64,000 bases of DNA from IMGVR_UViG_3300019458_000020:186814-250813, one strand, 5' to 3'; shown: positions 13,759 to 49,432, numbered from the stretch's first letter. Notes: a model not told the origin generated them from the sequence alone. Translations and numbers: made by a program.

Positions 13759-14112
13759 ATTTAATACATAGATTTGAGTAGAATAAAAGTAGAGTAATTT
13801 ATGTTATAAAAATTTCTTCCCTGTGGTTTTTTGGAAAATGAGTATGATTAACCGAAAAGATGAGTAATAAAATTGACTCTTCACTCTACTTTTATTTTAG
13901 ACCAAATTTTTGTCTGTGATCAGCGAATGGACAAGGGGCGGCTGGGGGACCCCCCAAAACGGCTATCACGAAGGCCACCAAGCCCCTATATAGGGGGGGC
14001 TAAAATGGGGCTTTTTTAGGGTTTTTATACCCCTTGCCCGTAGGGGCTGGAGGGAGGGTAAATGGTGGCTATTAAGCTGGCTCCGTAGGGGAGGGTTTGT
14101 TCTTTTAGAAGA

Positions 14113-14172
14113 GGGCAGTCATTCGGTAGTAACTTAACCGTAGTGACTGCTCCGGTGATTTATCTCTCACCG
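14113..14172 (-). ncRNA. candidate two-hairpin small RNA
   Basis: TTGACA-17-TATAAT promoter near 14215, then CGGTGA/TCACCG and GCAGTCA/TGACTGC stems; no ORF. Confidence 0.45.
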
Positions 14173-14224
14173 ATTGAGATTGTTATTATTATACAACAAT
14201 CTCAGAAGATGTCAAATCCTTTTC

Positions 14225-14431
14225 TTAAGCAACCTTGGTGAAATTACCAAAGGGATTCATTCCACTTTCCAGCATGGTGACTTGCCATTGGTTCGTGCAT
14301 TGGTCGAGCAACTTCTCATATTCGTCCTGTTCCGGTTCAGGTTGAGGAAACAAATCAAGTTGTTCAGTTGGAGTGATAGTCATAAGGTCTTTCAGGTCAG
14401 ACTCGGCAGAGATATTGGAGAAATCGTTCAT
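14225..14431 (-). CDS. hypothetical acidic protein
   Basis: ATG 6 nt after a TATAAT box. Confidence 0.6.
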   Translation of the reverse strand: MNDFSNISAESDLKDLMTITPTEQLDLFPQPEPEQDEYEKLLDQCTNQWQVTMLESGMNPFGNFTKVA

Positions 14432-14829
14432 GTAATTATTATACATTATCCCTTGTTGATGGCAAGAGAATCTTTTAACTTAATCCATCAAAGGAAGCGA
14501 CCTGTAGTAAGAGTCAAGGCTCTCCTTTGTCCGATGGGCCTTGAAGGTTCTCGTATCAGGACTACCATAGTTGCCGAATATGATAGGTTTCTCCTATCTT
14601 TAGGTCTTTGATTTTCATAGGTATTAGTGCCGTTCTCCACTGGCAACGATTTCACCAAGTTGTCATTCGTCAAGAGATTTGATACGTTTCTTTGCCGTTT
14701 GTTCGTCATCCTTCCGACCAGCTTTGTATGACTCCAACTGAATTTTACGAATCTGTTTGGCGAAGTTCTTATTGCCAATGCAGTGGTGAAGCTTAAATTC
14801 CCTTGCCCAATCGTCTGGAGTGTTCATAT

Positions 14830-15036
14830 TCAATCCATTGATTCCTGAGACGTAATACGATACCATTTACGGCCGCGGTTTAAGCCACGGTCTTTAGGCG
14901 TCATACCAACGGTGTCTTCATTGAAGATTGGCCAAAGGGCGGATCCTTCGAGTGAATGCATATCGCCTTTCTCAATTTTTTCATCTGGCCCAAGTTCTCG
15001 AAAATGGAATAGAATTTTCATCTTAGAATCCTCCAA
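14830..15036 (-). CDS. hypothetical protein
   Basis: Short ORF in the early region. Confidence 0.5.
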   Translation of the reverse strand: MEDSKMKILFHFRELGPDEKIEKGDMHSLEGSALWPIFNEDTVGMTPKDRGLNRGRKWYRITSQESMD

Positions 15037-15353
15037 GGAATGTTAGTACCCACTGTGAACCACGTTTCTGAACTTTAAAGGTGGCCGTTGACCCGGTGAA
15101 ATACCGAAGGAAATCGGTCAAGTCTTGAAGATCATCGAAGAAAATTTTACCGTTCATGATGGTATATTATCCTTTTTATGTTTATTTGTCAAGCACGATT
15201 TTAATTTCTTTCAAAGTTTCTCTAATGGGTTTAAGGTCAACGAATACCGCACGAATGGCAACCATTTATGATACCTGCCAAGGTGGATTCAATCCTTTTC
15301 AATAAGGCTAGTTCATGAAAAGGAGAACGGGGATTCCTTTCCCCGTGATTGAC

Positions 15354-15650
15354 TTAGGCAGCGATGAGCTGCTTGACGTGTTCGGGCATAGGACCATCGG
15401 ATTCGCTCCAAACCCTTCGAGCAATGGCCTTGATTTCTGCCACGTAGTTATCGCCCATTTCAAACGTGCCGTAAGTGGCATCGGACTTAGCAGCCACGAA
15501 CCATCTGGAATAAGGATTTCCATTTTCCTTTTCAGGTGTTTGATATTTTTTCAACACCAAATATGTAATAGTTCCCAGATCTCCAGCATAGCCATGCCAA
15601 ATCTCGTAGGGATTTGAAATTGGCCGAGTTTTTCCACACAGATTTTTCAT
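15354..15650 (-). CDS. hypothetical protein
   Basis: Own promoter; PYEIW..YLVLKKYQ..RWFVAAKS..FEMGD..YV. Confidence 0.75.
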   Translation of the reverse strand: MKNLCGKTRPISNPYEIWHGYAGDLGTITYLVLKKYQTPEKENGNPYSRWFVAAKSDATYGTFEMGDNYVAEIKAIARRVWSESDGPMPEHVKQLIAA

Positions 15651-16017: not shown

Positions 16018-16054
16018 GGAATGTTGAGAGAATCTATCCTATTTAACTGGCTTG

Positions 16055-19416: not shown

Positions 19417-19606
19417 CGATTTGCGTAGGCTGTTCGCCGAAGGCAAACCAGTGGTGACATACGAAGAGGTTGAACAATGCGGCCTGGCCTATATTAAAGA
19501 CGTTGACGTAGGGCCAGAATATGCCTTTGAACTGGCTTCCAACGACTACGCTCCTGATTATGGTTATGTGGATAATGGTTGTGAACAATTTGTGAAAGTC
19601 GCTTGA
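19397..19606 (+). CDS. hypothetical protein
   Basis: Overlaps the upstream gene as in an operon. Confidence 0.6.
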   Translation: MNFSESDDLRRLFAEGKPVVTYEEVEQCGLAYIKDVDVGPEYAFELASNDYAPDYGYVDNGCEQFVKVA

Positions 19607-19636
19607 CAATCTAAATTGTTTTGATATATTCTCGCC

Positions 19637-19861
19637 ATGATTAGTTTCAAAAATGATACCGAACTGACGCTCGTTACTTCTTTTGACGAGAAAACCGACA
19701 CCATTACCGGCGAAGAGACGGAAACGTTTAAGGCCGGCGAACCTGTTGACGCTGATATTATCGACGAAAACGAAACTAAAGGTGAAATGTTCGTTGACTT
19801 GCAGTTTGGTGACGGATCTGTTGCCTTTGGTGTTCAACGCGAATGCTTTGATGTCCTATGA
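19637..19861 (+). CDS. hypothetical acidic protein
   Basis: ATG 6 nt after the -10 box. Confidence 0.7.
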   Translation: MISFKNDTELTLVTSFDEKTDTITGEETETFKAGEPVDADIIDENETKGEMFVDLQFGDGSVAFGVQRECFDVL

Positions 19862-21412: not shown

Positions 21413-21943
21413 ATGTTATCGACAAACGTTCAGACGGAAGAAGAGAGAATTTACCATGTTGTTTATGGATTCGCATACCATGCTCATCAAAGCCGGGCAT
21501 TGACTCCTGAAAAACGTTTCCGTAAAAATGGCCGAGGACAGAATTCTGAAATTCTTTACATTACCCATCCAGTTGCTGTCAAGGATGATGCCATTCATCG
21601 GGCAAATGACTACTATCCTGCTGGTTCTCGAAACGTGTTCCTGATCAGTTTGGTTGCGATTCTCCATGATGTGCTAGAAGACACCGCCGTAACCAAGAAT
21701 GAATTACAAACATTTTTGATGGAGTTGCTTCCTTTCGCTGATGCAGTCAAGGTGATGGATGCTGTTTTACTTCTCACCAAAGACGGAAATAACTTCAATA
21801 TCATCACTTATCTTCATGGGATTCGATTGAATCCCTTCGCTACTATCGTCAAGTTGTCTGATCTTGACCATAACATGAGTGATTTGAAACCTGGTAATTT
21901 GCTTGACAAATACAAGCTCTGCCACTATTTTCTCACTCAATGA
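21413..21943 (+). CDS. HD-domain hydrolase, RelA/SpoT (small alarmone hydrolase)-like
   Basis: YITHPVAV..AILHDVLEDT..LLTK..TIVKLSDLDHN. Confidence 0.82.
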   Translation: MLSTNVQTEEERIYHVVYGFAYHAHQSRALTPEKRFRKNGRGQNSEILYITHPVAVKDDAIHRANDYYPAGSRNVFLISLVAILHDVLEDTAVTKNELQTFLMELLPFADAVKVMDAVLLLTKDGNNFNIITYLHGIRLNPFATIVKLSDLDHNMSDLKPGNLLDKYKLCHYFLTQ

Positions 21944-22215
21944 AATTCGTGTTTAGATACCGAAGTGGTCCAGATTGGATGACTCAAAAGGCGGCTAGCC
22001 GGGATTTTGCCGATAAATCCAGTGCCGAAGCTTTTGCTGATGGATTACGACTCGGGGGTGCTGGTAATGTGTCTTACGAAGAAGACGCGGGGGGTACCCC
22101 CACTCCATTACCTCGTAAGGGTAGAGGCCAATATTTTTGTGTTGTGTGTAATGAAAATCCAGTAAACCCACACGAAGGATTTGACACCTGTTCAAACTGT
22201 GTCAATAAAACGTAA
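21940..22215 (+). CDS. hypothetical protein with C-terminal CxxC..CxxC
   Basis: CVVC..CSNC; contains one GGGGGTACCCCC copy. Confidence 0.65.
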   Translation: MKFVFRYRSGPDWMTQKAASRDFADKSSAEAFADGLRLGGAGNVSYEEDAGGTPTPLPRKGRGQYFCVVCNENPVNPHEGFDTCSNCVNKT

Positions 22216-22218
22216 GTT

Positions 22219-22512
22219 TTAATCGTTTGTCTGTATAGTGTATATTAGAAGGAATGTTCTTTTCTTTTTTATACTCTCTAATAAATCTACTTCAAATTCA
22301 AAATTTTCTTCTCCGTATTTGTTCCATGATTTTTGTAAATAATCATTATCATGTCTATTGGCTTTCAAATCGTTTTTATGTTCGGACCATCTTCCTTTTA
22401 TATCATTAGAACTACCAATGTAGTATTTTCCATTAACTTTGTTAATGATTTTATAGATTCCAGATTTTTTTATTGACAGTGTATCATTCATGTAGTACAT
22501 GTATAATGACAA
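22219..22512 (-). pseudogene. truncated GIY-YIG homing endonuclease
   Basis: SGIYKIINKVNGKYYIGSS..HDNDYLQKSWNKYGEENF, then an abrupt loss of similarity to its paralog at 36849. Confidence 0.75.
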
Positions 22513-22714: not shown

Positions 22715-22803
22715 GGGCGTGTGGCGAAGCTGGTTGAACCGCGGCAGACTTAAAATCTGCTACTTAGGAAACATCGGGGGTTCGATTCCCTCCACGCCTA
22801 CCA
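22715..22803 (+). tRNA. tRNA-Leu(UAA)
   Basis: GCAGA-CTTAAAA-TCTGC, long variable arm, GGTTCGATTCC, ACCA. Confidence 0.95.
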
Positions 22804-23545
22804 TTTTAGGGTCATGTCTTCGGGACCAAATATTTATCTTCTTGACATCAATACCATTTCTAAGTGCGTGTTTTTTAACACTACTAGCAGATACTTTTAA
22901 TTTTCTAGCAACTTCTGATATGGGATTGTTGGATAATAGAGAAATCATTTCTTCATTTGAAGGCCATTTGATTTTTATCTTGAAAACATTTCCAACAGAT
23001 GAATAACGGCTTCTTATGGTTTCTATTCTTTTTTGTTGTTCTTCATAAATTTTCGATTGTAGGAAATGAATTCCACGTTTTTCAATCAAATCATTGATTC
23101 GGTAGTAGTTTCCCCCATAACCAACAAGTCCACATTTTAATAATGCTTCTCTTCGTGTATAAGATGATTCTATGGATATTATCAATTCTTCATCCGTGAC
23201 GTAATGGCCTTTCTTTTGTTTTTTTCTAGCTCTATAATTTGGAGTCAATGCATGACAATTACAACAAAAAAGTTTAAGATTTTCCAATTCATTATTTTTT
23301 CTATTGCCATCGACATGATGTAATTCTAACGGAATTGATTCATTTTTCCATTTTGTCAACTGGCAACCTTCACATCGATGTTCTTTTACACCATCTTTTA
23401 TTAGTTTAAGTTTTAATCTAAAAGTTGTCATGGTTATACATATACAACAAGTGTGAGTTCTAGTTAATTTAATTCTTGACTCTCTTTGAAAATCTGATAC
23501 TCTCATCCTATGATTGAAGTTCCACGACTTCCACGGATTACTCAT
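22760..23545 (-). CDS. HNH homing endonuclease
   Basis: HRCEGC..PLELHHVDGNRKNNELENL..CCNCHA; convergent on tRNA-Leu; true start uncertain. Confidence 0.85.
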   Translation of the reverse strand: MSNPWKSWNFNHRMRVSDFQRESRIKLTRTHTCCICITMTTFRLKLKLIKDGVKEHRCEGCQLTKWKNESIPLELHHVDGNRKNNELENLKLFCCNCHALTPNYRARKKQKKGHYVTDEELIISIESSYTRREALLKCGLVGYGGNYYRINDLIEKRGIHFLQSKIYEEQQKRIETIRSRYSSVGNVFKIKIKWPSNEEMISLLSNNPISEVARKLKVSASSVKKHALRNGIDVKKINIWSRRHDPKMVGVEGIEPPMFPK

Positions 23546-27475: not shown

Positions 27476-27710
27476 ATATGATTATCGACATAATAAATAC
27501 CCTTTCTGTCAATAAGTCGAACTTGACATAGAATTCGTTCTTGACTTTTCTTGGTGAATTTGTTATAGTATTGGAGTGGATGAGGCCGACCGAAAGGCGC
27601 CAAGAGTAGGGTACCTGGGAGACGATAAAAACTTTAACGATACCGTAAATACTTTCAAAAAATCTCCGTAATTTGTTTGACAAATAGGTTGAACTGGGTT
27701 AATATTCCCC

Positions 27711-30926: not shown

Positions 30927-30978
30927 ATTTTCGCAGTAGGCATCTTGACAACCAAAACAAAAACAGTATAATATCACC

Positions 30979-31215
30979 ATGAAATACAATAATAACACTA
31001 CGGCCACAGCTACCGGTAACAGTTCCAAACGAAAGATTGGTGGTTACAACAGCTCGATTCTTCGGGCCAAACGTAATCAGAAGCGACATGAAGCCGAGGC
31101 ACGAAACCAAGCGTGGTCCGATTTGACTCCAAAGCAACAACTGGCCAGTCTCGCCGGCCGCAGGGGTGAATCCAAACGTCAAGTGGCACGCATTCAAGCA
31201 GCCAACAAGAGTTAA
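30979..31215 (+). CDS. hypothetical basic protein
   Basis: ATG 6 nt after TATAAT; terminator-like hairpin near 31250. Confidence 0.75.
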   Translation: MKYNNNTTATATGNSSKRKIGGYNSSILRAKRNQKRHEAEARNQAWSDLTPKQQLASLAGRRGESKRQVARIQAANKS

Positions 31216-32099: not shown

Positions 32100-32132
32100 C
32101 AATAACCACAACATCCAGTAAAGTAAAAAACT

Positions 32133-32501
32133 ATGAAATACATGAAAAACATTGTACCTATTAATATGGGTGCCCGTGTCGAAGTTAGATTTGAATTTGA
32201 CCGAATTCTGTCCACCCGGCGGCTCTTCGCCAGTTGGGTCGGCGACCGTACGTTTAGTACGTTAAGTAACATTCCGGACAACGTGGCTGAACTTTTGACC
32301 GCCGTGGCCACTGTTCCTGGCGTCAATAACCATCGTGACGGGCAGACTCACGTCAGCGGCAACGAGCTTTCCGTTGAAGTGATTGCTATTGCCAATCGTC
32401 CCGTTCGGGAAATCGTCAAGACCATTCTGAAACGTGTTCAACGCCGGGTGGCAAAGGGTGAACGTCTTCAAATGGTTCGGCTACTACCTCGCAGCAAGTA
32501 A
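32133..32501 (+). CDS. hypothetical protein
   Basis: Own promoter; terminator at about 32543-32578. Confidence 0.7.
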   Translation: MKYMKNIVPINMGARVEVRFEFDRILSTRRLFASWVGDRTFSTLSNIPDNVAELLTAVATVPGVNNHRDGQTHVSGNELSVEVIAIANRPVREIVKTILKRVQRRVAKGERLQMVRLLPRSK

Positions 32502-32542
32502 ACTTTTCCTTCCAATTGGAAACGAAATGGGGATACCGTCCC

Positions 32543-32578
32543 AGCCCGTTGGAGAAATCCAACGGGTTTTTGTTTTTT
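32543..32578 (+). terminator. intrinsic terminator
   Basis: cccgttgga-gaaa-tccaacggg followed by a T-run. Confidence 0.8.
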
Positions 32579-32728
32579 CCATTTGACTTTTTTTAATTAA
32601 ATGTTAAACTTAATTAACAGCCGACGAGGCGAGGGTAGGGGACCAGTGGATCGACAAAAATTTTAACGTTAAAGTAAATAGTTAAAAAACTCTTTGACAA
32701 CTGATTTCTTTATGTTATTCTTTATGGC

Positions 32729-32887
32729 ATGAATGAATTTGAAGCTAACTTAGCCGCTGAGTCTGCCGCCGAATGGGCCGCAGAGGAAGCAATGGAAAGG
32801 GAAATGCTTGAACAGGGTGATTGTTGTTTGGACAACGAGCCGCCTGATTATCCCGACGGTTTCGATGATGGATACGGTGGCGAATAA
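32729..32887 (+). CDS. 52-aa very acidic protein (below the ORF-track cutoff)
   Basis: MNEFEANLAAESAAEWAAEEAMEREMLEQGDCCLDNEPPDYPDGFDDGYGGE; own promoter. Confidence 0.65.
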   Translation: MNEFEANLAAESAAEWAAEEAMEREMLEQGDCCLDNEPPDYPDGFDDGYGGE

Positions 32888-32935: not shown

Positions 32936-33787
32936 ATGAATAAACTTATCTTTGGAAAAGGTAATGCCAAACTGGCCGAAAACATTCTAACCTTTTCCCT
33001 TCCGTCTGGTTATAGTTGTCCGGGTGCAAAGGATTGCCTTTCAAAGGCCAATAGAGAAACCGGAAAGATTACAGACGGTGCCGGTTGTCAATTCCGTTGT
33101 TTCTCAGCGAGTCAGGAGTGCATTTTCCGTAACGTTCGGGAATCCCGATGGAACAATTTTGAACTGCTTCGGAACGCAAAAACGGTGAACGGCATGAAAG
33201 CTATTATTCTTGAATCACTTCCGAAAACTCCCTTTCAGGTTGTCGTTCGGATTCATGTCGCTGGTGATTTTTTCAGCCAGACATACTTTGACGCATGGTT
33301 GGCAGTCGCTAAGGAAAACCCTAACTTTCTCCTTTACGCTTACACTAAATCCCTTCCCTACTGGGTGGCTCGTTTGAATGATATCCCTTCTAACTTCATT
33401 CTAACTTCTTCTTTTGGTGGTAAGTATGACGATATGATAACGCAACACAATTTGCGTTACGCAAAGGTTGTTTACTCTGAGGAGCAGGCACAAGCCTTGA
33501 ATCTGGAAATTGACCATGACGATAGCCACGCCTATAAGAATGGACCTTCTTTCGCTCTGTTACTTCATGGAACACAACCTAAAGGAACAGAGGCAAACGT
33601 TGCTCTTCGGGTGTTACGGAAGGCAGGCAAAGGTGGTTATTATTCTCCCTATAACATCGGAAAGAACAAAGCCAAAAAGGGATATGGCCGTCTGGCCAAG
33701 TCAAAAAAGAAAACCGCTGGGGGGAGTACCCCCGAAGCCGGCTCCATAGGGGGGAAGAGTGTTTCTGCTGAACAAATTGCTGCTTGA
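32936..33787 (+). CDS. phage Gp88-like protein
   Basis: TFSLPSGYSCPG..VRIHVAGDFFSQTY..YAYTKSL. Confidence 0.75.
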   Translation: MNKLIFGKGNAKLAENILTFSLPSGYSCPGAKDCLSKANRETGKITDGAGCQFRCFSASQECIFRNVRESRWNNFELLRNAKTVNGMKAIILESLPKTPFQVVVRIHVAGDFFSQTYFDAWLAVAKENPNFLLYAYTKSLPYWVARLNDIPSNFILTSSFGGKYDDMITQHNLRYAKVVYSEEQAQALNLEIDHDDSHAYKNGPSFALLLHGTQPKGTEANVALRVLRKAGKGGYYSPYNIGKNKAKKGYGRLAKSKKKTAGGSTPEAGSIGGKSVSAEQIAA

Positions 33788-33790: not shown

Positions 33791-34009
33791 ATGAAATGGA
33801 CACGAAAGAAACCAACGAAACCCGGCCGCTACTGGTTCCGTGGCTGGGGCAAAACAAAGGTGGTTGTCATAGCCCATCATACCGATGCGGAGATTGACGC
33901 CTGGCGAGTTTGTGCCGTCGAATTCAATGAATACGGAACAGCGTTGAGCCTCTTTCCGGAAAATGAATGTGAGTGGTCCGACCGGGCCATTCCTGAACCA
34001 ACGGAGTAA
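33791..34009 (+). CDS. hypothetical protein (KPxKPGxxW family, paralog at 43329)
   Basis: KKPTKPGRYWF vs KPDKPGIWEWF. Confidence 0.65.
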   Translation: MKWTRKKPTKPGRYWFRGWGKTKVVVIAHHTDAEIDAWRVCAVEFNEYGTALSLFPENECEWSDRAIPEPTE

Positions 34010-34102
34010 CGCTGGGGGGTACCCCCCGAATAATCCATCCATACGGTAGGGATAGGACTTGACAGTAGAATCAATGTCTGTTACATTGTAAGTTGAAAAA
34101 TT

Positions 34103-34813
34103 ATGAATACAAAAAACAAAACAATTGCTATCGTCTTTGATAACTCCATATCGGCAGTGTCAAAAAATACGAAACCACTTCAATTGGCCCTGTTTGGGCT
34201 TGGTTACAAGTGGAATCGTTTCGACACTCAACCGGTTGTTATCAACTTCCCGGCAAAGCAGTGTGTGATTTACTTGAACACCAAAACCAAGAGCCTCTCT
34301 TGGGATAACGTTGTTCAAAGCAACGTCAAAGTTGTCGGCAACTACTCTTATACGAGCATCCGATTGACCGGCAACAATCTTTCGGAAGTCCTTAATTTCG
34401 TGGAACATCCGGTAAAACCCAAAATCGACGTGACAATTGAGGAATTGCATGATGATCGGTCAATTAAATTCATCGTCAACGCCGATGAAAAAACCGTAAA
34501 GGTCAATCTCACAAAACGTAACACCCTCAATCGGGAATCGGTTCATGACTTTCCTATTGCTGTTGAATTGTTAGACAAAGTTCAATCAGCTTTGGGCCGC
34601 AATTCTGTTTTGCCTGTTGTGAACTTCATTTATCCTTCCAGTTCAACGGGAAGGCCAGTGAATCGCCGGGTTCGTGTTACATTCTTCAATGACGCATACA
34701 TTCGTGGTTATGAACTTGAAGATGAAAATGATGACAAGGGCACATTCAAAGCCTTCCAAACAAAGAAAATAAACGGATCTGTTCTGTTGGTTTCCTTCCA
34801 TTCTGGTAAGTAA
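34103..34813 (+). CDS. hypothetical protein with C-terminal WYL-like domain
   Basis: VNFIYPSS..NRRVRV..YIRGYEL..FKAFQTKKI. Confidence 0.55.
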   Translation: MNTKNKTIAIVFDNSISAVSKNTKPLQLALFGLGYKWNRFDTQPVVINFPAKQCVIYLNTKTKSLSWDNVVQSNVKVVGNYSYTSIRLTGNNLSEVLNFVEHPVKPKIDVTIEELHDDRSIKFIVNADEKTVKVNLTKRNTLNRESVHDFPIAVELLDKVQSALGRNSVLPVVNFIYPSSSTGRPVNRRVRVTFFNDAYIRGYELEDENDDKGTFKAFQTKKINGSVLLVSFHSGK

Positions 34814-34933
34814 TTTCGGTGTAGGTTCATGTTTCTCTAGCCCCTCCTGAGTGGGACGGGTGGTACTAAATTAATAGGGTGGGGGGTACCCTCCCCATAG
34901 GGGGCATTTAAAATAAAGGGAAAAGGAGAAATT

Positions 34934-35010
34934 TGGTAGTCCTAGTGGGAATCGAACCCGACATCTATAGGTTGAAAGCCTATTATCCTAAGCCATTGGA
35001 CGACAGGACC
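34934..35010 (-). tRNA. tRNA-Glu(UUC)
   Basis: ATAGG-CTTTCAA-CCTAT, GGTTCGATTCC, ACCA. Confidence 0.93.
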
Positions 35011-35474: not shown

Positions 35475-35873
35475 ATGAAAGATAAAATCTTAGAACTTCA
35501 CAATTCAGGAAAATCATATAGAGAAATAAGACAAATTTTAGGATGTTCACATTCTCTCATTTCTTACTATGTTAACCCGGATGGCAAAACAAAACAACTC
35601 CAAAGACAAAATAAAAATCGTTTTATAAAAAGAGAAAAATACAAGTTATCTATGGGAGGAAAATGTTGTAAATGTGGATATGACCGTTGTCTTGCAGCCT
35701 TGCATTTTCATCATAAAAACCCAGAAGAAAAAAAGTTTTTGTTAAGTTCTGCTATGTGGGGAGTAAATTCAATAACCGAAGAAGATATCTTAAATGAAAT
35801 TAAGAAATGTGACTTGATTTGTGCAAATTGTCACGCAGAGTATCATTATCCAAATACTCTCAAGAAATGGTAG
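35475..35873 (+). CDS. HNH homing endonuclease with N-terminal HTH
   Basis: KCCKCGY..ALHFHH..CDLICANCHAEYH; stop overlaps the tRNA-fMet 3' end. Confidence 0.85.
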   Translation: MKDKILELHNSGKSYREIRQILGCSHSLISYYVNPDGKTKQLQRQNKNRFIKREKYKLSMGGKCCKCGYDRCLAALHFHHKNPEEKKFLLSSAMWGVNSITEEDILNEIKKCDLICANCHAEYHYPNTLKKW

Positions 35874-36787: not shown

Positions 36788-36848
36788 ATAACGAACATAT
36801 CACAAATAAAATAATTGTCAATCGCATTCTTGTTATACATATCAGATA

Positions 36849-37681
36849 TGACAAATACATTAAAGACCGAAAAGATAAGTGGAATATACAAAATTATCAA
36901 TAATATCAATGATAAATACTACGTTGGTAGTTCAAATAACATTTACAAACGATGGAAATATCACAAGCAAGATTTAAATCGAGGCAATCACAGGTCACAA
37001 TATTTGCAACGTGCGTGGAACAAATACGGTGAAGATAATTTTACTTTTGTAGTCACCGAATTAATTATATTGGATGAATTACTTTTACAAATAGAACAAG
37101 AATATCTTAATATTGCTTGTCAAGAAAAGGAAAAATGTTATAATTCATCTTTTGTTGCTGGAAAAATTGAAATGAATGAGATTACGAGAAACAAAATAAG
37201 TCAATCTCACAAAGGAAAGAAATTATCCAAGGAAACAAAAGAAAAGTTACGGCAATGTAATTTAGGAAAAAGATTATCAGAAGAAACTAAAAAGAAAATT
37301 AGTGATGCACACAAAGGAAAAGTTTTAAGTCAACCCAAAGGATGGCATCATACCGAAGAATCAAAGAAAAAAATTAGCCAGAAATTAAAAGGAAAATATG
37401 TTGGAATATTGAGTCATAAATTTGGTACTAAACATACTGAAGAATGGAAAAAACAATGGAGAGAAAGACTGAAAAATCATCATCCGAGGTTAGACAAAAC
37501 TGTATATCGATTTCAAAACGAAGTTACCAACGAAGTTTTTGACGGGTTGCAGTTTGATTTTAGAGTAAAATATAACATTCCTCCAGGAAATTTATGTCAT
37601 ATAATTCGAGGAAGGAGAAAATCTATACAAGGATGGAAATTGGTGGTCCGACCGGGATTCGAACCCGGAACAAAGCTTTAG
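36849..37681 (+). CDS. GIY-YIG homing endonuclease with NUMOD3-type repeats
   Basis: SGIYKI..YYVGSS..HRSQYLQRAWNKYG; repeated SxETKxKIS..HKGK; convergent on tRNA-Arg. Confidence 0.9.
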
Positions 37682-41278: not shown

Positions 41279-41577
41279 ATCAGTTTTCTTTCTACTAACG
41301 TTCTTTTTTTTGTTTGTTAATTCATTGATTCAACTATTGAATCAACTTTCGATATACCATCATAATTCATTTCTATAAGAAGTCAAACAGAATTTTCAAA
41401 ATTTTCTACTTTTCTTTTCTGAAAGAATCTTTCGTACAAATAACGTTTTCGACTTGACTTTTATAAAAAGTATGTTATAGTATTCACGTTGATGAGGTCG
41501 TCCCGAGGAACGCCGGGGGCACCAAGAGTAGGGGACCAGGGGATCGTTATAAACTTTAACGTTAACCTATTTAATAC

Positions 41578-41606
41578 AAAAAATCGCCAACCTTTCGATT
41601 GGCGAT
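41578..41606. terminator. intrinsic terminator
   Basis: aaaaaatcgccaa-cctttcga-ttggcgatt. Confidence 0.7.
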
Positions 41607-41625
41607 TGGAATGACAGCCTCCGAA

Positions 41626-41988
41626 TCAATCCCACCAGATTCTATAAACAGGAATGTTTTGTCCACCGAAGTCAATCGTTCTCAAATGACATTCATTCGC
41701 TTTGAGTGTATCCTTTAGAACACACGTATCCACTGTGATTGGAGAAATAACATACACACAAACCGATCCTTCCCTTGCCAAGATAACCTTGGAACCATTC
41801 GGCAACCGATTGAGAAGTTCTGGCCGAAATGCGTTATATCTGACAACAGTTCGTTCCAAAATCTCAACAGCTACCGACACCGAACAATATTCATTGGCAC
41901 GAAAGTTAAGATTCCGTTCATGCTTAGTTCCATTACAATCGGAGTAAGCATTCCGAACATCACGAAGCAAAGTTTGATTTAATTTCAT
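41626..41988 (-). CDS. hypothetical protein
   Basis: ATG 6 nt after TAAACT. Confidence 0.75.
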   Translation of the reverse strand: MKLNQTLLRDVRNAYSDCNGTKHERNLNFRANEYCSVSVAVEILERTVVRYNAFRPELLNRLPNGSKVILAREGSVCVYVISPITVDTCVLKDTLKANECHLRTIDFGGQNIPVYRIWWD

Positions 41989-42018
41989 GGTGAGAGTTTA
42001 CTGTTTTTTATACAAATG

Positions 42019-42396
42019 TCAAGCAGGTTTCTTAAAGAAAGCTGCAGTTCGATCTTCAAACTCAGCCATTCTCTGTGCAACTTGTGTGGGAACCATTAAC
42101 TTGTTTCCCTCTTGGAAAACACCAGGAAATGAATATCCATCCATGTAATCGATGAAAGCAACTTCCGTAAATCGCTTGTTGACTTTCAGAACGATATAAT
42201 GGGCATAACCATCACAAACATTCCACTTCAGATGTTTTCCTGGCTTCAAACCCTTTCCAGCAATCTTCTGAAGGGTTTCAACCAATTGCCAAAGTTGTTC
42301 GTCGTATTCACGCCATTTACCATCGTGGAGATTGTCACGAGCAACACCAGCAAGACGATTGATTTCTGTAATTGTATCAGTAATGAGATTTTTCAT
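42019..42396 (-). CDS. hypothetical protein
   Basis: Own promoter. Confidence 0.75.
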   Translation of the reverse strand: MKNLITDTITEINRLAGVARDNLHDGKWREYDEQLWQLVETLQKIAGKGLKPGKHLKWNVCDGYAHYIVLKVNKRFTEVAFIDYMDGYSFPGVFQEGNKLMVPTQVAQRMAEFEDRTAAFFKKPA

Positions 42397-44762: not shown

Positions 44763-45308
44763 TTATGGAATACTGTGGCAGGCGATGAATGTATCACTCG
44801 GCATCCATTGCCGATGTTCCATGCTTAGGACATTCTTAAATCCTCGTATAACAATGGGATTGTGAACGGCAGCAATGATTTGGCATCCATTCTTCTCTGC
44901 CTTCCGAAAACAATCAACCAGAAAATGACATGACCGAATTGACAGTGCCATATCAGGCTCGTCCATGATAATCGTTTCATGCTTCCACGTCTGAATTTCA
45001 TCAATAATCTTCTTAACCATTTGACCATGAGACATCATTATACAAGCCAGTTGCGTCATTGTCTCAATTTTATGGCCAAGCCGAGGATTATCCTTCTCAA
45101 AGTCAAACTCTCGAATGGCGTTGTTTCCATCGGTATCAAACTTGACAACATTCTTTCCCGCTGCGTGTCTTCCCATTATTAACTTCAACAGACTGCTTTT
45201 ACCTGTTCCTTGTTCTCCAACCAGAAGATTGACGCCAACATTAAAGTCAAAGGTTTCCCCTGCCTTCAATACTCGAAAGTCTTTCAGTATTTCCATTCGT
45301 TTCAACAT
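44763..45308 (-). CDS. ABC/AAA-type ATPase
   Basis: GEQGTGKS Walker A; SHGQ signature; IIMDEPDMALS Walker B; VHNP. Confidence 0.85.
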   Translation of the reverse strand: MLKRMEILKDFRVLKAGETFDFNVGVNLLVGEQGTGKSSLLKLIMGRHAAGKNVVKFDTDGNNAIREFDFEKDNPRLGHKIETMTQLACIMMSHGQMVKKIIDEIQTWKHETIIMDEPDMALSIRSCHFLVDCFRKAEKNGCQIIAAVHNPIVIRGFKNVLSMEHRQWMPSDTFIACHSIP

Positions 45309-45359
45309 ATACGTGCGTCAACAATACTCCATAAAAATTCTTTGTCAAGTCGCTTGACA

Positions 45360-46190
45360 TTTATATAAAAAATGGTAATTTCTTTCACAATTTAAGAACG
45401 GATTCAAAAAGTGGCGGCGACACTAAAAGCCAGACTAACGGTAAAACGTGAAGGGTAGGGGACCGGCAGATCGATGCAGCTTGGCACTGTATTGGCGTAT
45501 ATGGCGTTTCCTATTATTATTAGGTATTTCCCCTATCTCTTACAGGCGTCTTACATAACTTGTTGAAACACAACGCCATTTCTATAACTTATTATCAAGG
45601 GTTTATACAATATTTATAATTATCACGAAATCAACGCTTTAGGCGTCTTTATCGTTAACTTTATCAATAACATCAAGATCCTCTTCAAGTTGCTCAGGAC
45701 CCTCCACTTTTCCAGACATACCTACTCCCCGTGCAAGTAGCCAAGCAATTACATTGAGTAAAACGACAATAATAGCACCTAAGACTTTTAAGGACATATA
45801 TTAATTTATTGATCAATTACTCCAGGGTACTTTTCCCTGGGTACTTTTTTCTTTTTAGTACTTTTAAGCAATTAGCAGCAACAGCGTTCTGGGGAGGTAC
45901 ATAGGAGGGGAGCAATTCCAAAGCGCCAAAATATTTTCATATAAATAATTCTGATACGGAGATACGTATTTACATTATTAAGTAAAATTTTTACCGTGCC
46001 AGGAATTTCTGAAAGTAAAGAACGCACGGAGAGTCAGCATTTTTACTTAATACTTTTTATACAATTAGCTCTGTAGGGGACAAAATGGGGTGAAGTGGGT
46101 CATTGTGGTGCTTATGGGTCAGTCTTCAAAAGTTGGGGGGTACCCCCGCGTTGAAACCCTCTCTGTATATAGGGTGAGGGCTTTATTCCG
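45360..46190. other. ~830-bp non-coding region with repeats (possible origin or terminus)
   Basis: Repeated (A)TAACTT, GGCGTCTT and GTACTTT; GC-rich palindromes. Confidence 0.4.
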
Positions 46191-46199: not shown

Positions 46200-46520
46200 T
46201 CACCGTTTTATAGCTTTTTCATCGAGGTAATCTTTGGCAGACTTCCACTCTTTTATTTTGATTGCGTAATAATGTCTTCCGAAGAAAGGTTCCCAAATAA
46301 TTATAACATAACTCTTTTTGACTGGTGCGTCCAAGCCCGTATTTCCGGAATACTGTTCAAGCATAGGTCCGACCAAGATACTTATCTTTAATCTTTCATT
46401 TCTATAATTGAAATGTCTATCAATTAATTTATCTTTATTAGAAGAGACGGCGAGGATAATGAAACTTATTATAAAACCAAAAAATAGAATAGTCAGTAAC
46501 GTGGCCCTTTTTACTTTCAT
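46200..46520 (-). CDS. membrane-anchored hypothetical protein (paralog of 49433)
   Basis: N-terminal TM helix; VKKSYVIIIWEPFFGRH. Confidence 0.65.
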   Translation of the reverse strand: MKVKRATLLTILFFGFIISFIILAVSSNKDKLIDRHFNYRNERLKISILVGPMLEQYSGNTGLDAPVKKSYVIIIWEPFFGRHYYAIKIKEWKSAKDYLDEKAIKR

Positions 46521-47200
46521 AAATATGTAATTGTAACCGGCTTGGCTTTTCTTCCGTCTATGTGTGACCTGTATCCTTTCTTACTTATATTCAAGATTCA
46601 TTATTCTTATTTTAGTTTAAGGAACAGAACAATGGTATATCTATTATTTGTTCGTTGAGTATAATAATTCCATTAAAACGTATTAGTTTTGTTCCTCTAT
46701 ATTGGGTGGAATATCCTAATTGAATTGGTTTCTTTCCGTTTGTAAGTTTATTAACTACGTGAATTACACCAACAATGATAGGAGTCAGAGCCAACATCCA
46801 TATTATTATCTTTTTGGAAATTTTCATGATTTATTCTTATTTAAGAATACATTAATTATCCAAATGAGATACATGCAAAGTGGTAATAGAAGAAAGATTA
46901 GAGATGACCACATGGTTCCCTTTGACAGTAAGACGATGCTCGATGCGAACGCGAGGAAGATGACAATAAATGTCAATAGGGTTTTGATTATCACACGTAT
47001 CATAAATGTGTATTGAGTTTTTTATCCAATTCAATGATTCGTTGTTTTATTTGACGCAGTTTCACTTCAGCATAAATGTTGTATCCTATCAATGGAATAA
47101 GCAACGTCAACATGGTTATGAGTAGTATCTTTTTCTTTTTATATTTTGTCATACGGTTGAATTCTACACTTATTACCTCTCTACATCTTTCATTTTCATA

Positions 47201-47515
47201 TTATATACACTCCAATACTTCAGCGAACGCTCGATTCAAATCTCCTTGGTCACAGGCAAGGGGATAACCTTCTGGACCATACTTTGAAATAATATCCTTG
47301 ATTCGTTGACGTGCAGGAGACTTCAAGAATGTTTCACGTTTGATTCTTTGTTCATTAGCTTTTCTTGTGGCTTCTTCTTCCGTCAAACCCGTTCCACAAA
47401 CTACTCTTCCATCTGAACAGAATAGAAATTGTCTCCAATAACTTTCATGGAAACCCATACAATTTTCTCCGTTTACTAAATGTGGTGGTTCATCTTTATT
47501 AATGATAGTATTCAT
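47201..47515 (-). CDS. hypothetical protein
   Basis: ATGA overlap with the ligase. Confidence 0.65.
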   Translation of the reverse strand: MNTIINKDEPPHLVNGENCMGFHESYWRQFLFCSDGRVVCGTGLTEEEATRKANEQRIKRETFLKSPARQRIKDIISKYGPEGYPLACDQGDLNRAFAEVLECI

Positions 47516-48381
47516 TGGATTTTAGAACGGAGATAATTCTTATACATTTCAACGGTCTTTTTGCCGACGGATTTCTTTACGGCTTCGGATTCCACAATTT
47601 CTCCCTTACCTTCTCTCAAAACATCTTCTGTCATGGCAGAGATAATATCTCTCATTTTTTCCATACAATGTCCTGGCAATTTATCCAAGACATGTTCTAG
47701 TCGCATCAAAGTCACCCACTCGTCCGCAACGGCGTTGGCATCATCCAACACTTTAAGTTGTGAAGGGTCAACAACAGGTCTTGGTGTGGATGTTTCTTTG
47801 AAAGAATCTCCCTTATGTTTACAAATAAGTCTCTCACCATTGCTTAGAGTAATTTCAATCAAAGGCCGGAGGACGACACCTTCCCGCTTTTTTGGTTCTG
47901 TGATTCCATTTCTTACTGACTGAACACTTGGTTTGTCTCGTTCGGCATCCAAAGCCACAAGGTCAGTAGAAACTTTTGTATAATCGACAAATTCGAGGCC
48001 CAATTTCTTTGCTATATCCGCAGCGTCCGGAACTGATAACCAACAATCACCAATTTGAACATCGAAGACAACGAATTTTAGTTCCTTTCCGTAAGTTGCC
48101 GACATTCCTTGTTGACTTCCGCCGTAAGCTTCACCAAAAACTGTTACATCTTTGTCAATAGGCGAACCAAGGTCTTTGAATTGTTGAATTAAATTTGTTT
48201 CATCAAACAAAGCTACGAAACGTACGTGACTTTCTCCACCAGAGAAGTAACGAATACTTCCATCTGACGGACGAAACGTGACGTGTGCATAGGTTCCATG
48301 AATTTTCTCCAAGGCATAACATTCCTTAAACAAAAGGATTGTCTGTTCTTTATACAAGTTACTAATGTGTAAATACCCGAT
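47512..48381 (-). CDS. RNA ligase, Rnl2-like family
   Basis: EKIHGT (motif I), FGEAYG, FDVQI, REGVVLRP, ICKHK; probable AUC start at 48381. Confidence 0.85.
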   Translation of the reverse strand: MGYLHISNLYKEQTILLFKECYALEKIHGTYAHVTFRPSDGSIRYFSGGESHVRFVALFDETNLIQQFKDLGSPIDKDVTVFGEAYGGSQQGMSATYGKELKFVVFDVQIGDCWLSVPDAADIAKKLGLEFVDYTKVSTDLVALDAERDKPSVQSVRNGITEPKKREGVVLRPLIEITLSNGERLICKHKGDSFKETSTPRPVVDPSQLKVLDDANAVADEWVTLMRLEHVLDKLPGHCMEKMRDIISAMTEDVLREGKGEIVESEAVKKSVGKKTVEMYKNYLRSKIQ

Positions 48382-48688
48382 ATGTCCTTTCCGCCCAACA
48401 ATTTACGTTGGTGCTTGGTTAATTTTGTGTCTCGTCAGATACCATTTTCTTCTGGACTTCTACCACATATTATACACTTGGTTTCTTGATTGTCAAGCAT
48501 CACTTATTATTCTTGTTGTCTATTTTGTATCCATCTGCAATCTATTGCCAATCCGTATGGTGCAATCAAATTTTTATCACACTTTATACATTTACATGAT
48601 ACCATACCAGAATCATTACGTGCAGTCAATTCTGAGAGAAGACACACATGATTACAGAATTTTTGTTTTATTAATGTAAAAAATGATT

Positions 48689-49120
48689 TCATTTATTCAA
48701 ATGAGTCAAACAGTTTTCAAACCCATCAGATAATTCTCTTAATGAAGCAATATGAACGGCATCTCCGTGATTGCGGAGAGATAATCTCCACACGTCATCA
48801 ACGAGAATTGAGACGGAACTGGCTACTTCAATTATACCAATTCTGAGAAATTTTGATAAAATTCTCACGTTTGCGTATGGCATTGAAAATAAGACATAGA
48901 AATTGGAAGGGTGTCCTTCACACGAAAAGTATGTGATTCCACCCATTCTTTCGATTGCTTCAACGAAATATGTTACTCCTCGTTCTAATGTTGCTGGCCG
49001 GTTAAAAATCAAATCATACCGAACAAGAGGCGGTTTCCTATAAGAAATATCCCACGGAGTTTCTAATTCTCCGGGCAATCTTTCTCTGTATGATTTTTTC
49101 ATATAACTGGAAAACTCCAT
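48689..49120 (-). CDS. hypothetical protein
   Basis: LERGVTYFV..TYFSCEGH. Confidence 0.65.
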   Translation of the reverse strand: MEFSSYMKKSYRERLPGELETPWDISYRKPPLVRYDLIFNRPATLERGVTYFVEAIERMGGITYFSCEGHPSNFYVLFSMPYANVRILSKFLRIGIIEVASSVSILVDDVWRLSLRNHGDAVHIASLRELSDGFENCLTHLNK

Positions 49121-49332
49121 CCCTTTCCGGGATTCTCATTCCATCCTACTCTTTTACCATTTTCAAGCGTCCACCATGAATGAACGTTACGATGCACTCC
49201 CGGCCAAGATTCGATATAACTTTCGTGTTCCGAAACAACTGACAGATGAAGAAACTTAGCAGCCCGAGTATCCATAAATGACCGAAAGAATTCTTGTGGT
49301 AATACATCTCTGAGTGTTTTCATGATTGACAA
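49099..49332 (-). CDS. hypothetical protein
   Basis: WPGVHRNVHSWW..VGWNENP..GWSFPV. Confidence 0.7.
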   Translation of the reverse strand: MSIMKTLRDVLPQEFFRSFMDTRAAKFLHLSVVSEHESYIESWPGVHRNVHSWWTLENGKRVGWNENPGKGWSFPVI

Positions 49333-49432
49333 TTATAACACCGATGTATAAAAAGTCAAGGGTGGTTTATTTCACTGGTGGGGGTACCCCCCAAAAAAAA
49401 GAATCCACCAACGGTATAGGGAGAGGATATAT

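What the first reader, a model, noticed from the sequence alone, without database searches (positions are those of the whole stretch)
13944..49392. Seven-copy GGGGGTACCCCC palindrome with a trailing ATAGGG, even inside genes
Seen: copies at 13944, 22089, 33719, 34014, 34881, 46135 and 49380. Most are followed within about 5-40 nt by (C/T)ATAGGG or a close variant (TAAGGG, GTAGGG). Such a GC-only palindrome is improbable in this AT-rich DNA. Two copies are in coding frames (AGGTPTP in 21940-22215; AGGSTPEAGSIGG in the gp88 tail). Inference: a bipartite protein-binding or recombination site, or a tiny dispersed element.
Basis: partly seen in the sequence, partly recalled or inferred. Interest (0 to 1): 0.6.

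Follow-up and report, generated by a model that had tools for sequence, protein, structure and literature searches.

The report
Repeated GC hairpin in phage early region
A short GC-only palindrome plus a second small hairpin recurs seven times in the variable early-gene region of an uncultured T4-like giant phage; it most resembles the known stem-loop (PeSL) cassettes that end small genes and let T4-type phages swap them, so it is real but largely ordinary.

Summary
There are four exact GGGGGTACCCCC copies, two near-copies and one variant lacking the T (GGGGGACCCCCC). All lie within window 13.9-49.4 kb and nowhere else in the 250-kb record; chance expects 0.06. TAGGG follows within 50 nt in six of seven copies (TAAGGG in the seventh), against 0.13-0.22 expected.

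The record is a T4-like jumbo phage from a cave metagenome. The copies sit in its hyperplastic early region: small ORFs, tRNAs, homing endonucleases and more than half of the genome's sigma70-type promoters.

Each copy folds as two tandem hairpins. H1 is G5-6 TA C5-6. H2 is a C-rich arm, an ATA-containing loop and a G-rich arm, so the ATAGGG tail is the loop plus 3' arm of H2.

Five related phage fragments keep the palindrome in the same three slots. At two slots the nearest relative switches exactly at the motif, and in one relative the ORF between them is an unrelated gene.

The closest known system is the PeSL element of T4-type phages (Gn-loop-Cn stem-loop plus early promoter). Only two of the seven copies abut a promoter, and large indel boundaries are not enriched near the motif. 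Function is inferred, not shown. I rate it a new variant of a known kind, of modest interest.

The parts
13944..13996 (+). Copy 1 (variant). H1 is GGGGGACCCCCC at 13944-13955. H2 is CCCCTATATAGGGG at 13983-13996, followed by GGGGCTTTTTT. It lies in a GC-rich structured island (13925-14182) between minus-strand genes.
22090..22127 (+). Copy 2. H1 is at 22090-22101 with a weak tail TAAGGGTAGAGG. It lies in-frame (A-G-G-T-P-T-P) in the linker of the 91-aa ORF 21940-22215. It is absent from relative G001, whose ortholog has a shorter, different linker. It is 118 nt from a GIY-YIG gene that is specific to G000.
33719..33753 (+). Copy 3 (slot A). G6-AGTA-C5 at 33719-33733 plus ATAGGGGGG at 33746-33754, inside the C-terminal tail of the GP88-family gene (32936-33787). 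The GGGGTACCCC core is kept in all six related phages, with in-frame 3-nt loop indels.
34014..34087 (+). Copy 4 (slot B). The order is: stop TAA (34007-34009), CGCT, H1 G6TAC6 (34014-34027), H2 TCCATCC..GGATAGGA with TAGGG at 34047-34051, sigma70-type promoter TTGACA-17-TACATT (34059-34087), ATG at 34103. This is a complete terminator-like/promoter composite.
34873..34905 (+). Copy 5 (slot C). ATAGGGTGGGGGGTACCCTCCCCATAGGGGG, with H1 and H2 overlapping on the C-run. It lies between the ORF 34103-34813 (+) and tRNA-Glu (34934-35010, -). It is 85-88% identical to G001, L165 and L166 while the flanks are 24-48% identical.
46136..46180 (+). Copy 6. H1 is at 46136-46147 and H2 is CCCTC..ATATAGGGTGAGGG at 46157-46180. 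It lies 53 nt downstream of the stop of minus-strand gene 46200-46520. On the minus strand the order is stop, H2', ACGC, H1.
49332..49428 (.). Copy 7. H1 is at 49380-49391 and H2 is ATCCACC..TATAGGGAGAGGAT at 49403-49428. Read on the minus strand the order is: stop of gene 49433-49807, H2', T8 (a canonical intrinsic terminator), H1, promoter TTGACT-16-TATAAT (49359-49332), next gene.

Best explanation
The motif is the stem-loop module of PeSL-like regulatory cassettes in the hyperplastic early region of a T4-like jumbo phage.

Shown:
- Each copy can form two tandem GC hairpins. H1 is G5-6 TA C5-6. H2 is a C-arm, an ATA-containing loop and a G-arm.
- Four copies lie 6-70 nt after the stop codon of a small gene, on that gene's strand.
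- Two copies are directly followed by a sigma70-type promoter and the next gene.
- The palindrome is conserved in the same three slots in six related phages.

Inferred:
- In early transcripts the hairpins attenuate read-through or protect the 3' end of the upstream message. The adjacent promoter, where present, restarts transcription.
- Because the same 12-22 nt recur at several gene boundaries, the copies serve as short homology for recombination (T4-type, or copy-choice). Small ORF cassettes lying between copies can then be exchanged, replaced or lost.
- Copies inside coding sequence are tolerated because the palindrome reads as Gly-Gly-Thr-Pro in disordered linkers or tails.
For: Context:
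- The phage is T4-like: Gp23 PF07068 at E 7e-64 and a T4-type terminase.
- 45 of the 83 sigma70-type promoters in the genome lie in 200-240 kb, which is window 13-53 kb. That is exactly where all the copies are.
- Median gene length there is 98 aa. 24% of the region is intergenic, yet 5 of 7 copies are intergenic (P = 0.011).

Structure:
- All seven copies fold as H1 plus H2.
- H2 stems differ between copies and phages while pairing is kept: CCCC/GGGG, CCCTC/GAGGG, CCACTC/GAGTGG, CTTGCC/GGCAGG.
- The three independent H1 arm substitutions are all C to T in the 3' arm. That gives a G-U pair in the sense RNA.

Composite layout:
- The layout is seen at 34015 and 49380.
- In all six phages, slot B is stop, then H1, then a sigma70 promoter, then the ATG. 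[quoted passage not shown]

Recombination:
- G000 and G001 are 93-98% identical between slots A and B, but 50% identical to the left and 35% to the right.
- To the right of slot B, G001 instead matches L166 (84%).
- G002 carries an unrelated 69-aa ORF between the same two motif copies.
- The left flank of L169 slot B, AACCGCTGGGGGGAGTACCCCC, is identical to G000 slot A.

Literature and direct comparison:
- PeSLs are composite terminator/promoter motifs of T4-type phages. [quoted passage not shown]
- They lie in hyperplastic regions next to ORFans. They were shown to terminate, to promote and to recombine (PMC2839356, PMC4122927).
- RB49 itself shows 11 G4-6-loop-C4-6 hairpins in 49 kb: after stops, inside promoters and one inside a CDS.
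Against: - Only 2 of the 7 copies in this genome abut a promoter. Two copies lie inside genes.
- H1 is never followed by a T-run, whereas the phage does use canonical hairpin-plus-T-run terminators elsewhere.
- In G001 and L165, slot C lies just after a canonical terminator. In G001 it also precedes a minus-strand terminator-like hairpin. It should therefore be little transcribed, yet it is the best-conserved copy.
- The H1-to-H2 order is the same on the genome's + strand for all 7 copies, although two lie among minus-strand genes. This is unexpected for a transcription-oriented element.
- Large indel boundaries between G000 and G001 are not enriched near CTTGAC or near the palindromes.
- 12-22 nt is short for homologous recombination.
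- Folding energies are not better than shuffles.
- No RNA data exist.
Confidence: 0.55

Rival explanations
1. The motif is a duplex-DNA recognition site: a dimeric phage or host protein binds GGGGGTACCCCC, with ATAGGG as an auxiliary contact. Candidates are a regulator, a topoisomerase or nucleoid protein, or a nuclease that starts recombination. The effect would be at the DNA level and polar with respect to the genome.
For: - The same 12-mer with a TA centre is kept in all copies and slots, whereas RB49 stem-loops have varied loops.
- Slot C is a roughly 30-nt island, 85-92% identical between phages, in a probably untranscribed gap between convergent terminators.
- All 7 copies share one genomic polarity regardless of gene direction.
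- In the GP88 tail the Thr codon is ACC and the following Pro codon CCY in 6 of 6 phages, despite a 36% GC genome. This suggests nucleotide-level selection.
Against: - The distance to promoters varies: the palindrome centre lies about 14-38 nt upstream of the -35 hexamer.
- Most copies are at gene 3' ends, not at promoters.
- C-to-T changes break the duplex palindrome but keep G-U pairing.
- No candidate protein co-varies with the motif. The HTH gene 35475-35873 is absent from G001, which keeps the motif.
- No binding test was possible.
Confidence: 0.2
2. The motif is a miniature mobile or selfish repeat (REP/BIME-like, MITE-like, or spread by homing-endonuclease co-conversion) that inserts at gene ends and occasionally in-frame in genes.
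For: - Copy 22090 is present in G000 but absent from the ortholog in G001. It sits 118 nt from a GIY-YIG gene that G001 also lacks.
- The motif is clade-specific. Relatives at 64% RNA-ligase identity, including a complete 365-kb genome, have none.
- Identical flank plus palindrome occurs in different slots of different phages.
Against: - Three copies are syntenic in six phages.
- No terminal inverted repeats or target duplications were seen.
- No Y1 transposase, tyrosine integrase or serine recombinase is present in the 250 kb.
- The slot C composite occurs in IMG/VR only in the syntenic relative.
Confidence: 0.12
3. The tail is a promoter for a phage single-subunit RNA polymerase (T7-like ...TATAGGGAGA start), preceded by an unrelated hairpin.
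For: The tails TATAGGGAGAGG (49380) and TATATAGGGTGAGG (46136) resemble the T7 initiation region.
Against: - There is no conserved roughly 17-nt upstream promoter sequence.
- Two tails are in-frame coding sequence.
- At 46136 and 49380 the tail points against the genes.
- No PF00940 match was found in the record, although that search's control did not ring.
- Abundant sigma70-type promoters serve these genes.
Confidence: 0.03
4. The motif is a chance or compositional artefact.
For: None beyond the somewhat higher GC (0.41-0.46) of 14-36 kb.
Against: - 6 matches were seen against 0.06 expected.
- GGGTACCC, GTACCCCC and related words are among the most over-represented 7- and 8-mers in the region under a 3rd-order Markov model.
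- The motif is conserved in five related phage fragments.
Confidence: 0.01

Closest known systems
PeSL (promoter-early stem-loop) composite terminator/promoter cassettes of T4-type phages (RB49/phi1, T4/PST, KVP40/nt-1; PMC2839356, PMC4122927)
   Same: - The host virus is T4-like.
- The elements lie in a hyperplastic region of small ORFans that is rich in sigma70-type early promoters.
- The stem-loop is Gn-loop-Cn.
- The elements lie between an upstream stop codon and a downstream promoter/ATG.
[quoted passage not shown]
- They are associated with cassette replacement and mosaic junctions between close relatives.
- The stem-loop consensus is clade-specific.
- 'Half' elements consisting of the stem-loop only also occur.
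   Different: - Here the conserved repeat is the stem-loop pair, not the promoter. The same 12-mer with a TA centre recurs in all copies.
- A second C-arm/ATA/G-arm hairpin (the ATAGGG tail) accompanies it.
- Only 2 of 7 copies carry a promoter.
- Two copies are embedded in-frame in genes and conserved there.
- H1 has no T-run.
- Polarity is fixed relative to the genome.
- Terminator, promoter and mini-circle activities are untested here.
Bacterial REP/BIME elements
   Same: Both are short GC-rich imperfect palindromes at gene 3' ends and between convergent genes, often in pairs. Proposed roles are mRNA 3'-end protection, gyrase binding and recombination. Some of these copies are preceded by (A/G)TAG, like the REP GTAG head.
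   Different: This is a phage, not a chromosome. There are only 7 copies, no RAYT/Y1 transposase, and the GTAG-like head is not consistent across copies.
Integron attC sites
   Same: Both are hairpin-forming imperfect palindromes placed right after the stop codon of small cassette ORFs, and cassettes are exchanged at them.
   Different: No integron integrase or any tyrosine recombinase is present in the record. The element is far shorter than attC. Promoters are interspersed, so this is not a promoterless array.
Rickettsia palindromic elements (RPE) / in-frame palindromic insertions (recalled from memory)
   Same: A palindromic repeat is found in-frame inside protein-coding genes without breaking them (22090, 33722).
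   Different: RPEs are 100-150 nt and numerous. Here the element is 12-45 nt and mostly intergenic.
Mycobacteriophage stoperators (recalled from memory)
   Same: Both are short repeats dispersed through a phage genome, at gene boundaries and within short ORFs.
   Different: Stoperators are asymmetric repressor sites oriented with transcription, in temperate phages. Here the repeat is a palindrome in a lytic-type T4-like phage with no identified repressor.

Membership tests
PeSL (T4-type phage promoter-early stem-loop cassette) | Host genome is a T4-type myovirus | tested here: met
   Gp23 PF07068 at E 6.7e-64. T4-type large terminase PF03237. T4 RNA ligases and T4_Y16D in the window.
PeSL (T4-type phage promoter-early stem-loop cassette) | Located preferentially in hyperplastic regions of small, variable ORFs | tested here: met
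   All copies lie in window 13.9-49.4 kb. Median gene length is 98 aa. There are many indels and homing endonucleases relative to G001/G002. 45 of the genome's 83 sigma70 promoters lie here.
PeSL (T4-type phage promoter-early stem-loop cassette) | Stable stem-loop, typically polyG-loop-polyC | tested here: met
   H1 is G5-6 TA C5-6 in all copies. The same hairpin type was seen directly in RB49.
PeSL (T4-type phage promoter-early stem-loop cassette) | Sigma70-like early promoter joined to the stem-loop, spanning upstream stop to downstream start | tested here: inconclusive
   Met at 34015 and 49380, and at slot B in 6 of 6 phages. Not met at 13944, 22090, 33722, 34882 and 46136, which would be stem-loop-only 'half' elements.
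PeSL (T4-type phage promoter-early stem-loop cassette) | Sits at insertion, deletion or replacement junctions between close relatives | tested here: inconclusive
   Yes for slots A and B: identity switches and the ORF72/ORF69 replacement. No enrichment at large G000/G001 indel boundaries. There is no comparator for 13944, 46136 or 49380.
PeSL (T4-type phage promoter-early stem-loop cassette) | Demonstrated terminator and promoter activity; mini-circle formation | not testable with these tools
   No RNA runs exist, and only contigs of the source metagenome were available, which showed no joints.
Intrinsic (rho-independent) terminator | GC hairpin immediately followed by a U/T-run on the transcribed strand | tested here: not met
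   H1 has no T-run in 7 of 7 copies. Only H2 of copy 49380 (minus strand, T8) and the 13944 region (+ strand, T6) qualify.
REP/BIME with RAYT | Y1 (RAYT) transposase in the genome; GTAG head plus palindrome | tested here: not met
   PF01797 is absent, and the control rang in 6 genomes. The GTAG/ATAG head is seen only at slot C and in the D1 repeats.
Integron attC | Integron integrase (tyrosine recombinase) and attC array | tested here: not met
   PF00589 is absent, and the control rang in 14 of 14 genomes. PF00239 is also absent. 90 kb of the parent contig was not seen.
T7-type phage RNAP promoter | Single-subunit RNAP gene and a conserved roughly 20-nt promoter ending TATAGGG | tested here: inconclusive
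   There was no PF00940 match, but the control rang nowhere. Upstream sequences are not conserved and the orientation is wrong at two copies.

The most novel reading that the evidence does not exclude
The palindrome-plus-tail is a genome-polar, DNA-level recognition site for an unidentified protein of this phage clade (nuclease, topoisomerase or recombination mediator). It would drive site-directed exchange of small gene cassettes, an integron-like shuffling system in T4-like jumbo phages without a known recombinase. Three observations are consistent with this: the identical 12-mer in all slots, the highly conserved slot C island lying between convergent terminators, and the uniform + strand polarity of all seven copies.
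Probability: 0.15. Interest if true: 0.7.

Novelty: new variant of a known kind. Interest (0 to 1): 0.33.

Why it matters
If the reading is right, PeSL-type shuffling is not confined to the few cultured coliphage and vibriophage pairs in which it was described. It would also operate in uncultured jumbo T4-like phages from a cave metagenome. The form here is unusually compact and sequence-uniform, and it can sit inside coding sequence.

This gives a concrete, searchable signature (Gn-TA-Cn plus Cn-ATA-Gn at gene ends) for mapping where giant phages gain and lose accessory genes. It also offers a small, clonable pair of hairpins for testing attenuation against recombination. It does not open a new class of system.

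Tried and rejected
- TAG recoding. I suspected it from a CTA suppressor tRNA and from the TAG in the tail. ORFs do not lengthen under TAG=Q, so table 11 was kept.
- Rfam, at gathering and at E<=1: nothing at any copy.
- T7-like RNAP, tyrosine integrase, serine recombinase and Y1 transposase: no matches in the record.
- Megablast to the phage collection: no match.
- A 14-mer scan of IMG/VR gave more than 112 unrelated contigs. The apparent link to terminase genes is what one expects from the only widely conserved gene. Some AT-rich contigs show TAGGGG..GGGGGTACCCCC, but I did not show them to be related.
- Protein-seeded searches with the 236-aa and 106-aa neighbours found nothing. The 72-aa cassette ORF has no relatives outside its own cluster.
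- Two exact-pattern scans for a further contig covering 46136 or the slot C composite found only G001.
- Sequencing runs: only two DNA runs of the source cave metagenome, kept as contigs. They showed no RNA, no joints and no variants.
- Folding energies against shuffles are uninformative for G-run/C-run sequences.
- Test of large indel boundaries against CTTGAC motifs and palindromes: negative.
- I did not build a covariance model or count structure pairs. H1 pairs are almost invariant and would say nothing.

Full report
**What is in the sequence.**
A search for GGGGGTACCCCC with up to one mismatch gives six sites in the window. Four are exact: 22090, 34015, 46136 and 49380. Two have one mismatch: 33722 and 34882. 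Dinucleotide shuffles expect 0.06.

It lacks the T, so it is a looser relative.

The window is the last 64 kb of a 250,813-nt virus record with 35.8% GC. The other 187 kb hold no copy. Almost all GGGG-N(0-8)-CCCC sites of the genome that are not tRNA arms are these copies. Words such as GGGTACCC and GTACCCCC are, after the promoter word CTTGACA, among the most over-represented words of the region under a third-order Markov model.

TAGGG follows the palindrome within 50 nt in six copies, and TAAGGG follows in the seventh. Only 0.13-0.22 copies are expected to have it by chance. The mirror arrangement never occurs.

**What the genome is.**
The record encodes a T4-type major capsid protein (PF07068, E 7e-64) and a T4-type large terminase. 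The window holds T4-type RNA ligases, ClpX, Thg1 and PTH2-like genes, nine tRNAs, a tmRNA and several homing endonucleases.

The record is the first 250,813 nt of a 340,880-nt contig from a cave metagenome. I tested TAG recoding because of a CTA suppressor tRNA. ORFs did not improve, so the standard code was kept.

Sigma70-type promoters (TTGAC[AT]-N16-18-TAnnnT) are concentrated here. 45 of the genome's 83 lie in 200-240 kb, which is window 13-53 kb. By the source's own gene calls, median gene length in 13.5-50 kb is 98 aa and 24% of the region is intergenic.

This is a hyperplastic early region in the T4 sense, and every copy of the motif lies in it.

**Anatomy of a copy.**
All seven copies fold as two neighbouring hairpins.
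- H1 is the palindrome itself (G5-6 TA C5-6).
- H2 has a C-rich 5' arm, a loop containing ATA or TATA(G), and a G-rich 3' arm.
- The spacer between H1 and H2 is 0-35 nt. At 34882 the two hairpins share the C-run.

Folding energies do not beat shuffles, because G-runs and C-runs pair in any order. The case for H2 rests on comparison instead. Its stem sequence differs between copies and phages while pairing is kept:
- CCCC/GGGG
- CCCTC/GAGGG
- TCCATCC/GGATAGGA
- CTTGCC/GGCAGG
- CCACTC/GAGTGG
- CCCC-GTAC-GGGG

**Position relative to genes.**
Five of the seven copies are intergenic (P = 0.011 against the 24% intergenic fraction).

Four copies lie 6-70 nt after a stop codon on the strand of that gene: 34015, 34882, 46136 and 49380.

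Two copies are complete composites.
- On the + strand: TAA, H1, H2, TTGACA-17-TACATT, then ATG at 34103.
- On the - strand: TAA, H2', T8, H1, TTGACT-16-TATAAT, then the next gene.

Two copies are inside genes.
- 22090 lies in the linker of a 91-aa zinc-ribbon-like ORF.
- 33722 lies in the basic C-terminal tail of a GP88-family protein.
- Both are read as Gly-Gly-(Ser)-Thr-Pro.

13944 lies in a GC-rich island (13925-14182) that folds better than shuffles on both strands (z about -3).

H1 is never followed by a T-run, although the phage uses canonical terminators elsewhere.

**Relatives.**
Protein-seeded searches found five related phage fragments:
- G001 (25.9 kb), syntenic with window 19.2-46.1 kb
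- G002 (29 kb), syntenic with 14.8-40.8 kb
- L165, L166 and L169

All keep the palindrome in three syntenic slots.

Slot A is the GP88 tail.
- The GGGGTACCCC core survives in all six phages.
- The tail upstream of it is only about 50% identical.
- Loop indels come in threes (AGT, TAC).
- The Thr codon is ACC in 6 of 6 phages and the following Pro codon is CCY, in a 36% GC genome.
- This argues for selection on the nucleotides as well as on the protein.

Slot B follows the stop of the next small ORF. In all six phages it precedes a sigma70 promoter and the ATG of the 236-aa gene. [quoted passage not shown]

Slot C lies between that gene and tRNA-Glu.
- About 30 nt (ATAGGGGGTGGGGGGTACCCTCCCCATAGGGGG) are 85-92% identical among G000, G001, L165 and L166.
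- The flanks are 19-57% identical.

Copy 22090 is absent from G001, whose ortholog has a shorter, different linker.

More distant relatives, at 64% RNA-ligase identity and including a complete 365-kb genome, have no copy. The motif is therefore clade-specific.

**Evidence for recombination at the motif.**
- Between slots A and B, G000 and G001 are 93% identical over the whole segment. In 100-nt windows 33801-34000 they are 93-97% identical.
- Immediately to the left they are 50% identical, and immediately to the right 35%.
- To the left of slot A, G001 is closest to L165 and L169 (74%).
- To the right of slot B, G001 is closest to L166 (84%), and that switch falls at H1.
- In G002 the ORF between the two slots is an unrelated 69-aa gene with its own promoter. 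The motif copies and the flanking genes are kept.
- The left flank plus palindrome of slot B in L169 (22 nt) is identical to slot A in G000. Copies in different slots have therefore exchanged sequence.

Against this:
- Other mosaic junctions lie inside genes without any motif, for example 34190 and 34500.
- The right edge of the G000/G001 block lies about 25 nt before H1.
- The 40 large indel boundaries between G000 and G001 are not nearer to CTTGAC or to the palindromes than random positions are.

**Comparison with what is known.**
Arbiol et al. 2010 and Comeau et al. 2014 (PMC2839356, PMC4122927) describe PeSLs in T4-type phages.
- They are composite early-promoter/stem-loop motifs in hyperplastic regions.
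- They run from an upstream stop codon to the downstream start.
- The stem-loop may lie upstream of, within or downstream of the promoter.
- They terminate and promote transcription in reporters.
- They sit at indels and replacements between close relatives, form mini-circles, and also occur as degraded half elements.

I checked RB49 directly. 49 kb of its genome holds 11 G4-6-loop-C4-6 hairpins. [quoted passage not shown] Their loops differ from copy to copy.

The present motif fits this class on five counts: virus type, region, stem-loop type, layout at two copies and at slot B in six phages, and the cassette replacement.

It differs in six ways:
- The repeated unit is the hairpin pair rather than the promoter.
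- The same 12-mer recurs in every copy.
- There is a second hairpin with an ATA loop.
- Only two of the seven copies have a promoter.
- Two copies are in-frame coding sequence.
- The H1-to-H2 order follows the genome's + strand even among minus-strand genes.

**Mechanism I commit to (confidence 0.55).**
- The hairpins form in early transcripts at the ends of small genes. There they attenuate read-through or protect 3' ends.
- With the neighbouring promoters they insulate each small gene as its own unit.
- Because the same 12-22 nt recur at several boundaries, they act as preferred crossover or copy-choice points. Cassettes between copies are thereby exchanged or replaced.

Shown: the repeat, its position, its conservation, and two mosaic junctions plus one replacement at the motif. 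Inferred: hairpin formation in vivo, attenuation, and the recombination mechanism.

The C-to-T pattern in the 3' arm (three events, none as G-to-A in the 5' arm) mildly favours an RNA hairpin on the sense strand.

**Rivals.**
A duplex-DNA protein site (0.2) is favoured by three things: the invariant 12-mer, the uniform polarity, and slot C lying just after a canonical + terminator and, in G001, before a minus-strand terminator-like hairpin that I read by eye.

A small mobile or co-converted repeat (0.12) is suggested by copy 22090 and its neighbouring G000-specific GIY-YIG gene. It is weakened by synteny and by the absence of any transposase or recombinase.

A T7-type promoter and chance are disfavoured.

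**Verdict.**
The finding is real and clade-specific. It is best read as a compact variant of the PeSL stem-loop cassette system of T4-type phages, so it is of modest interest. The DNA-site reading is not excluded and would be more interesting if true.

Noticed in passing
window 27560-27700, 31320-31460, 32590-32730, 41485-41625 (all + strand); G001 and G002 homologs: This is a second repeat family ('D1'). A terminator is followed by promoter CTTGACTTTT..TATAGT, then a conserved roughly 60-nt core (..GAGGGTAGGGGACCAGGGGATCGACAAAAACTTTAACGTTAA..). The core holds tandem AGGGGAYC units and the perfect AT palindrome TTTAACGTTAAA. A second promoter, TTTGACAA, follows. There are 4 copies here, 3 in G001 and 2 in G002. 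TAGGGGAC occurs 5 times on the + strand and 0 times on the - strand. In G002 one copy carries GGGGTACCCCC in place of GGGGATCGAC. It could be a small RNA or a regulator site between tandem promoters. Rfam gave no match.
   Followed up: partly
window 8136-8211 and 10429-10836 (- strand): The phage encodes a suppressor-type tRNA with anticodon CTA (reads TAG) and a full-length tmRNA (Rfam 107.5 bits; tag peptide ending ..NAVAA). Reading TAG as Gln did not lengthen ORFs in 12-52 kb.
   Followed up: partly
window 13925-14182: This is a GC-rich island in an AT-rich intergenic region, with three (C/T)(G/A)TAGGGG words and several G-run/C-run hairpins. It folds better than shuffles on both strands (z -3.1 and -2.9). 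A perfect minus-strand promoter (14215-14188) points into it. It may be a structured leader or ncRNA.
   Followed up: partly
window 45800-46130: About 330-400 nt have no ORF of 60 aa or more on either strand, yet are 78-88% identical to G001. A + strand promoter lies at 45353. The stretch ends at the 46136 copy. It could be a non-coding or antisense RNA.
   Followed up: no
e.g. window 30944-30990, 19603-19643, 41984-42023, 49332-49322: Many sigma70-type promoters have the ATG only 6-9 nt after the -10 hexamer and no Shine-Dalgarno sequence. This suggests leaderless or near-leaderless early mRNAs, a possible clue to the unknown host.
   Followed up: no
window 22219-22491 (-), 22760-23431 (-), 36830-37681 (+), 55573-56058 (-): These are free-standing homing endonuclease genes (two GIY-YIG, one with NUMOD3; one HNH; one LAGLIDADG). 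The first three fall in segments with no match in relative G001.
   Followed up: partly
G000 137766-137860 (outside the window): One more bipartite GC-hairpin site of the same style but a different sequence is GGGGAAACCCC-TAT-CCCTTTAGGG-TAGGGGGAGG, followed by GACCCTTTAGGGTCG. Several (GA)CCC-N-TAGGGTC hairpins are scattered elsewhere in the genome (37556, 38847, 51684, 122753).
   Followed up: no
whole record: The IMG/VR record equals coordinates 1-250,813 of JGI contig Ga0187893_10000017 (340,880 nt). The remaining 90 kb was not seen, so genome-wide counts and 'absent' gene families refer to 74% of the contig.
   Followed up: no
window 32108-32573 and 44763-45350: Two G000-specific gene cassettes relative to G001 each have a CTTGAC promoter word within about 11 nt of one of their two boundaries. 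This recalls PeSL-type promoter-mediated indels, although overall the boundaries are not enriched near promoters.
   Followed up: partly
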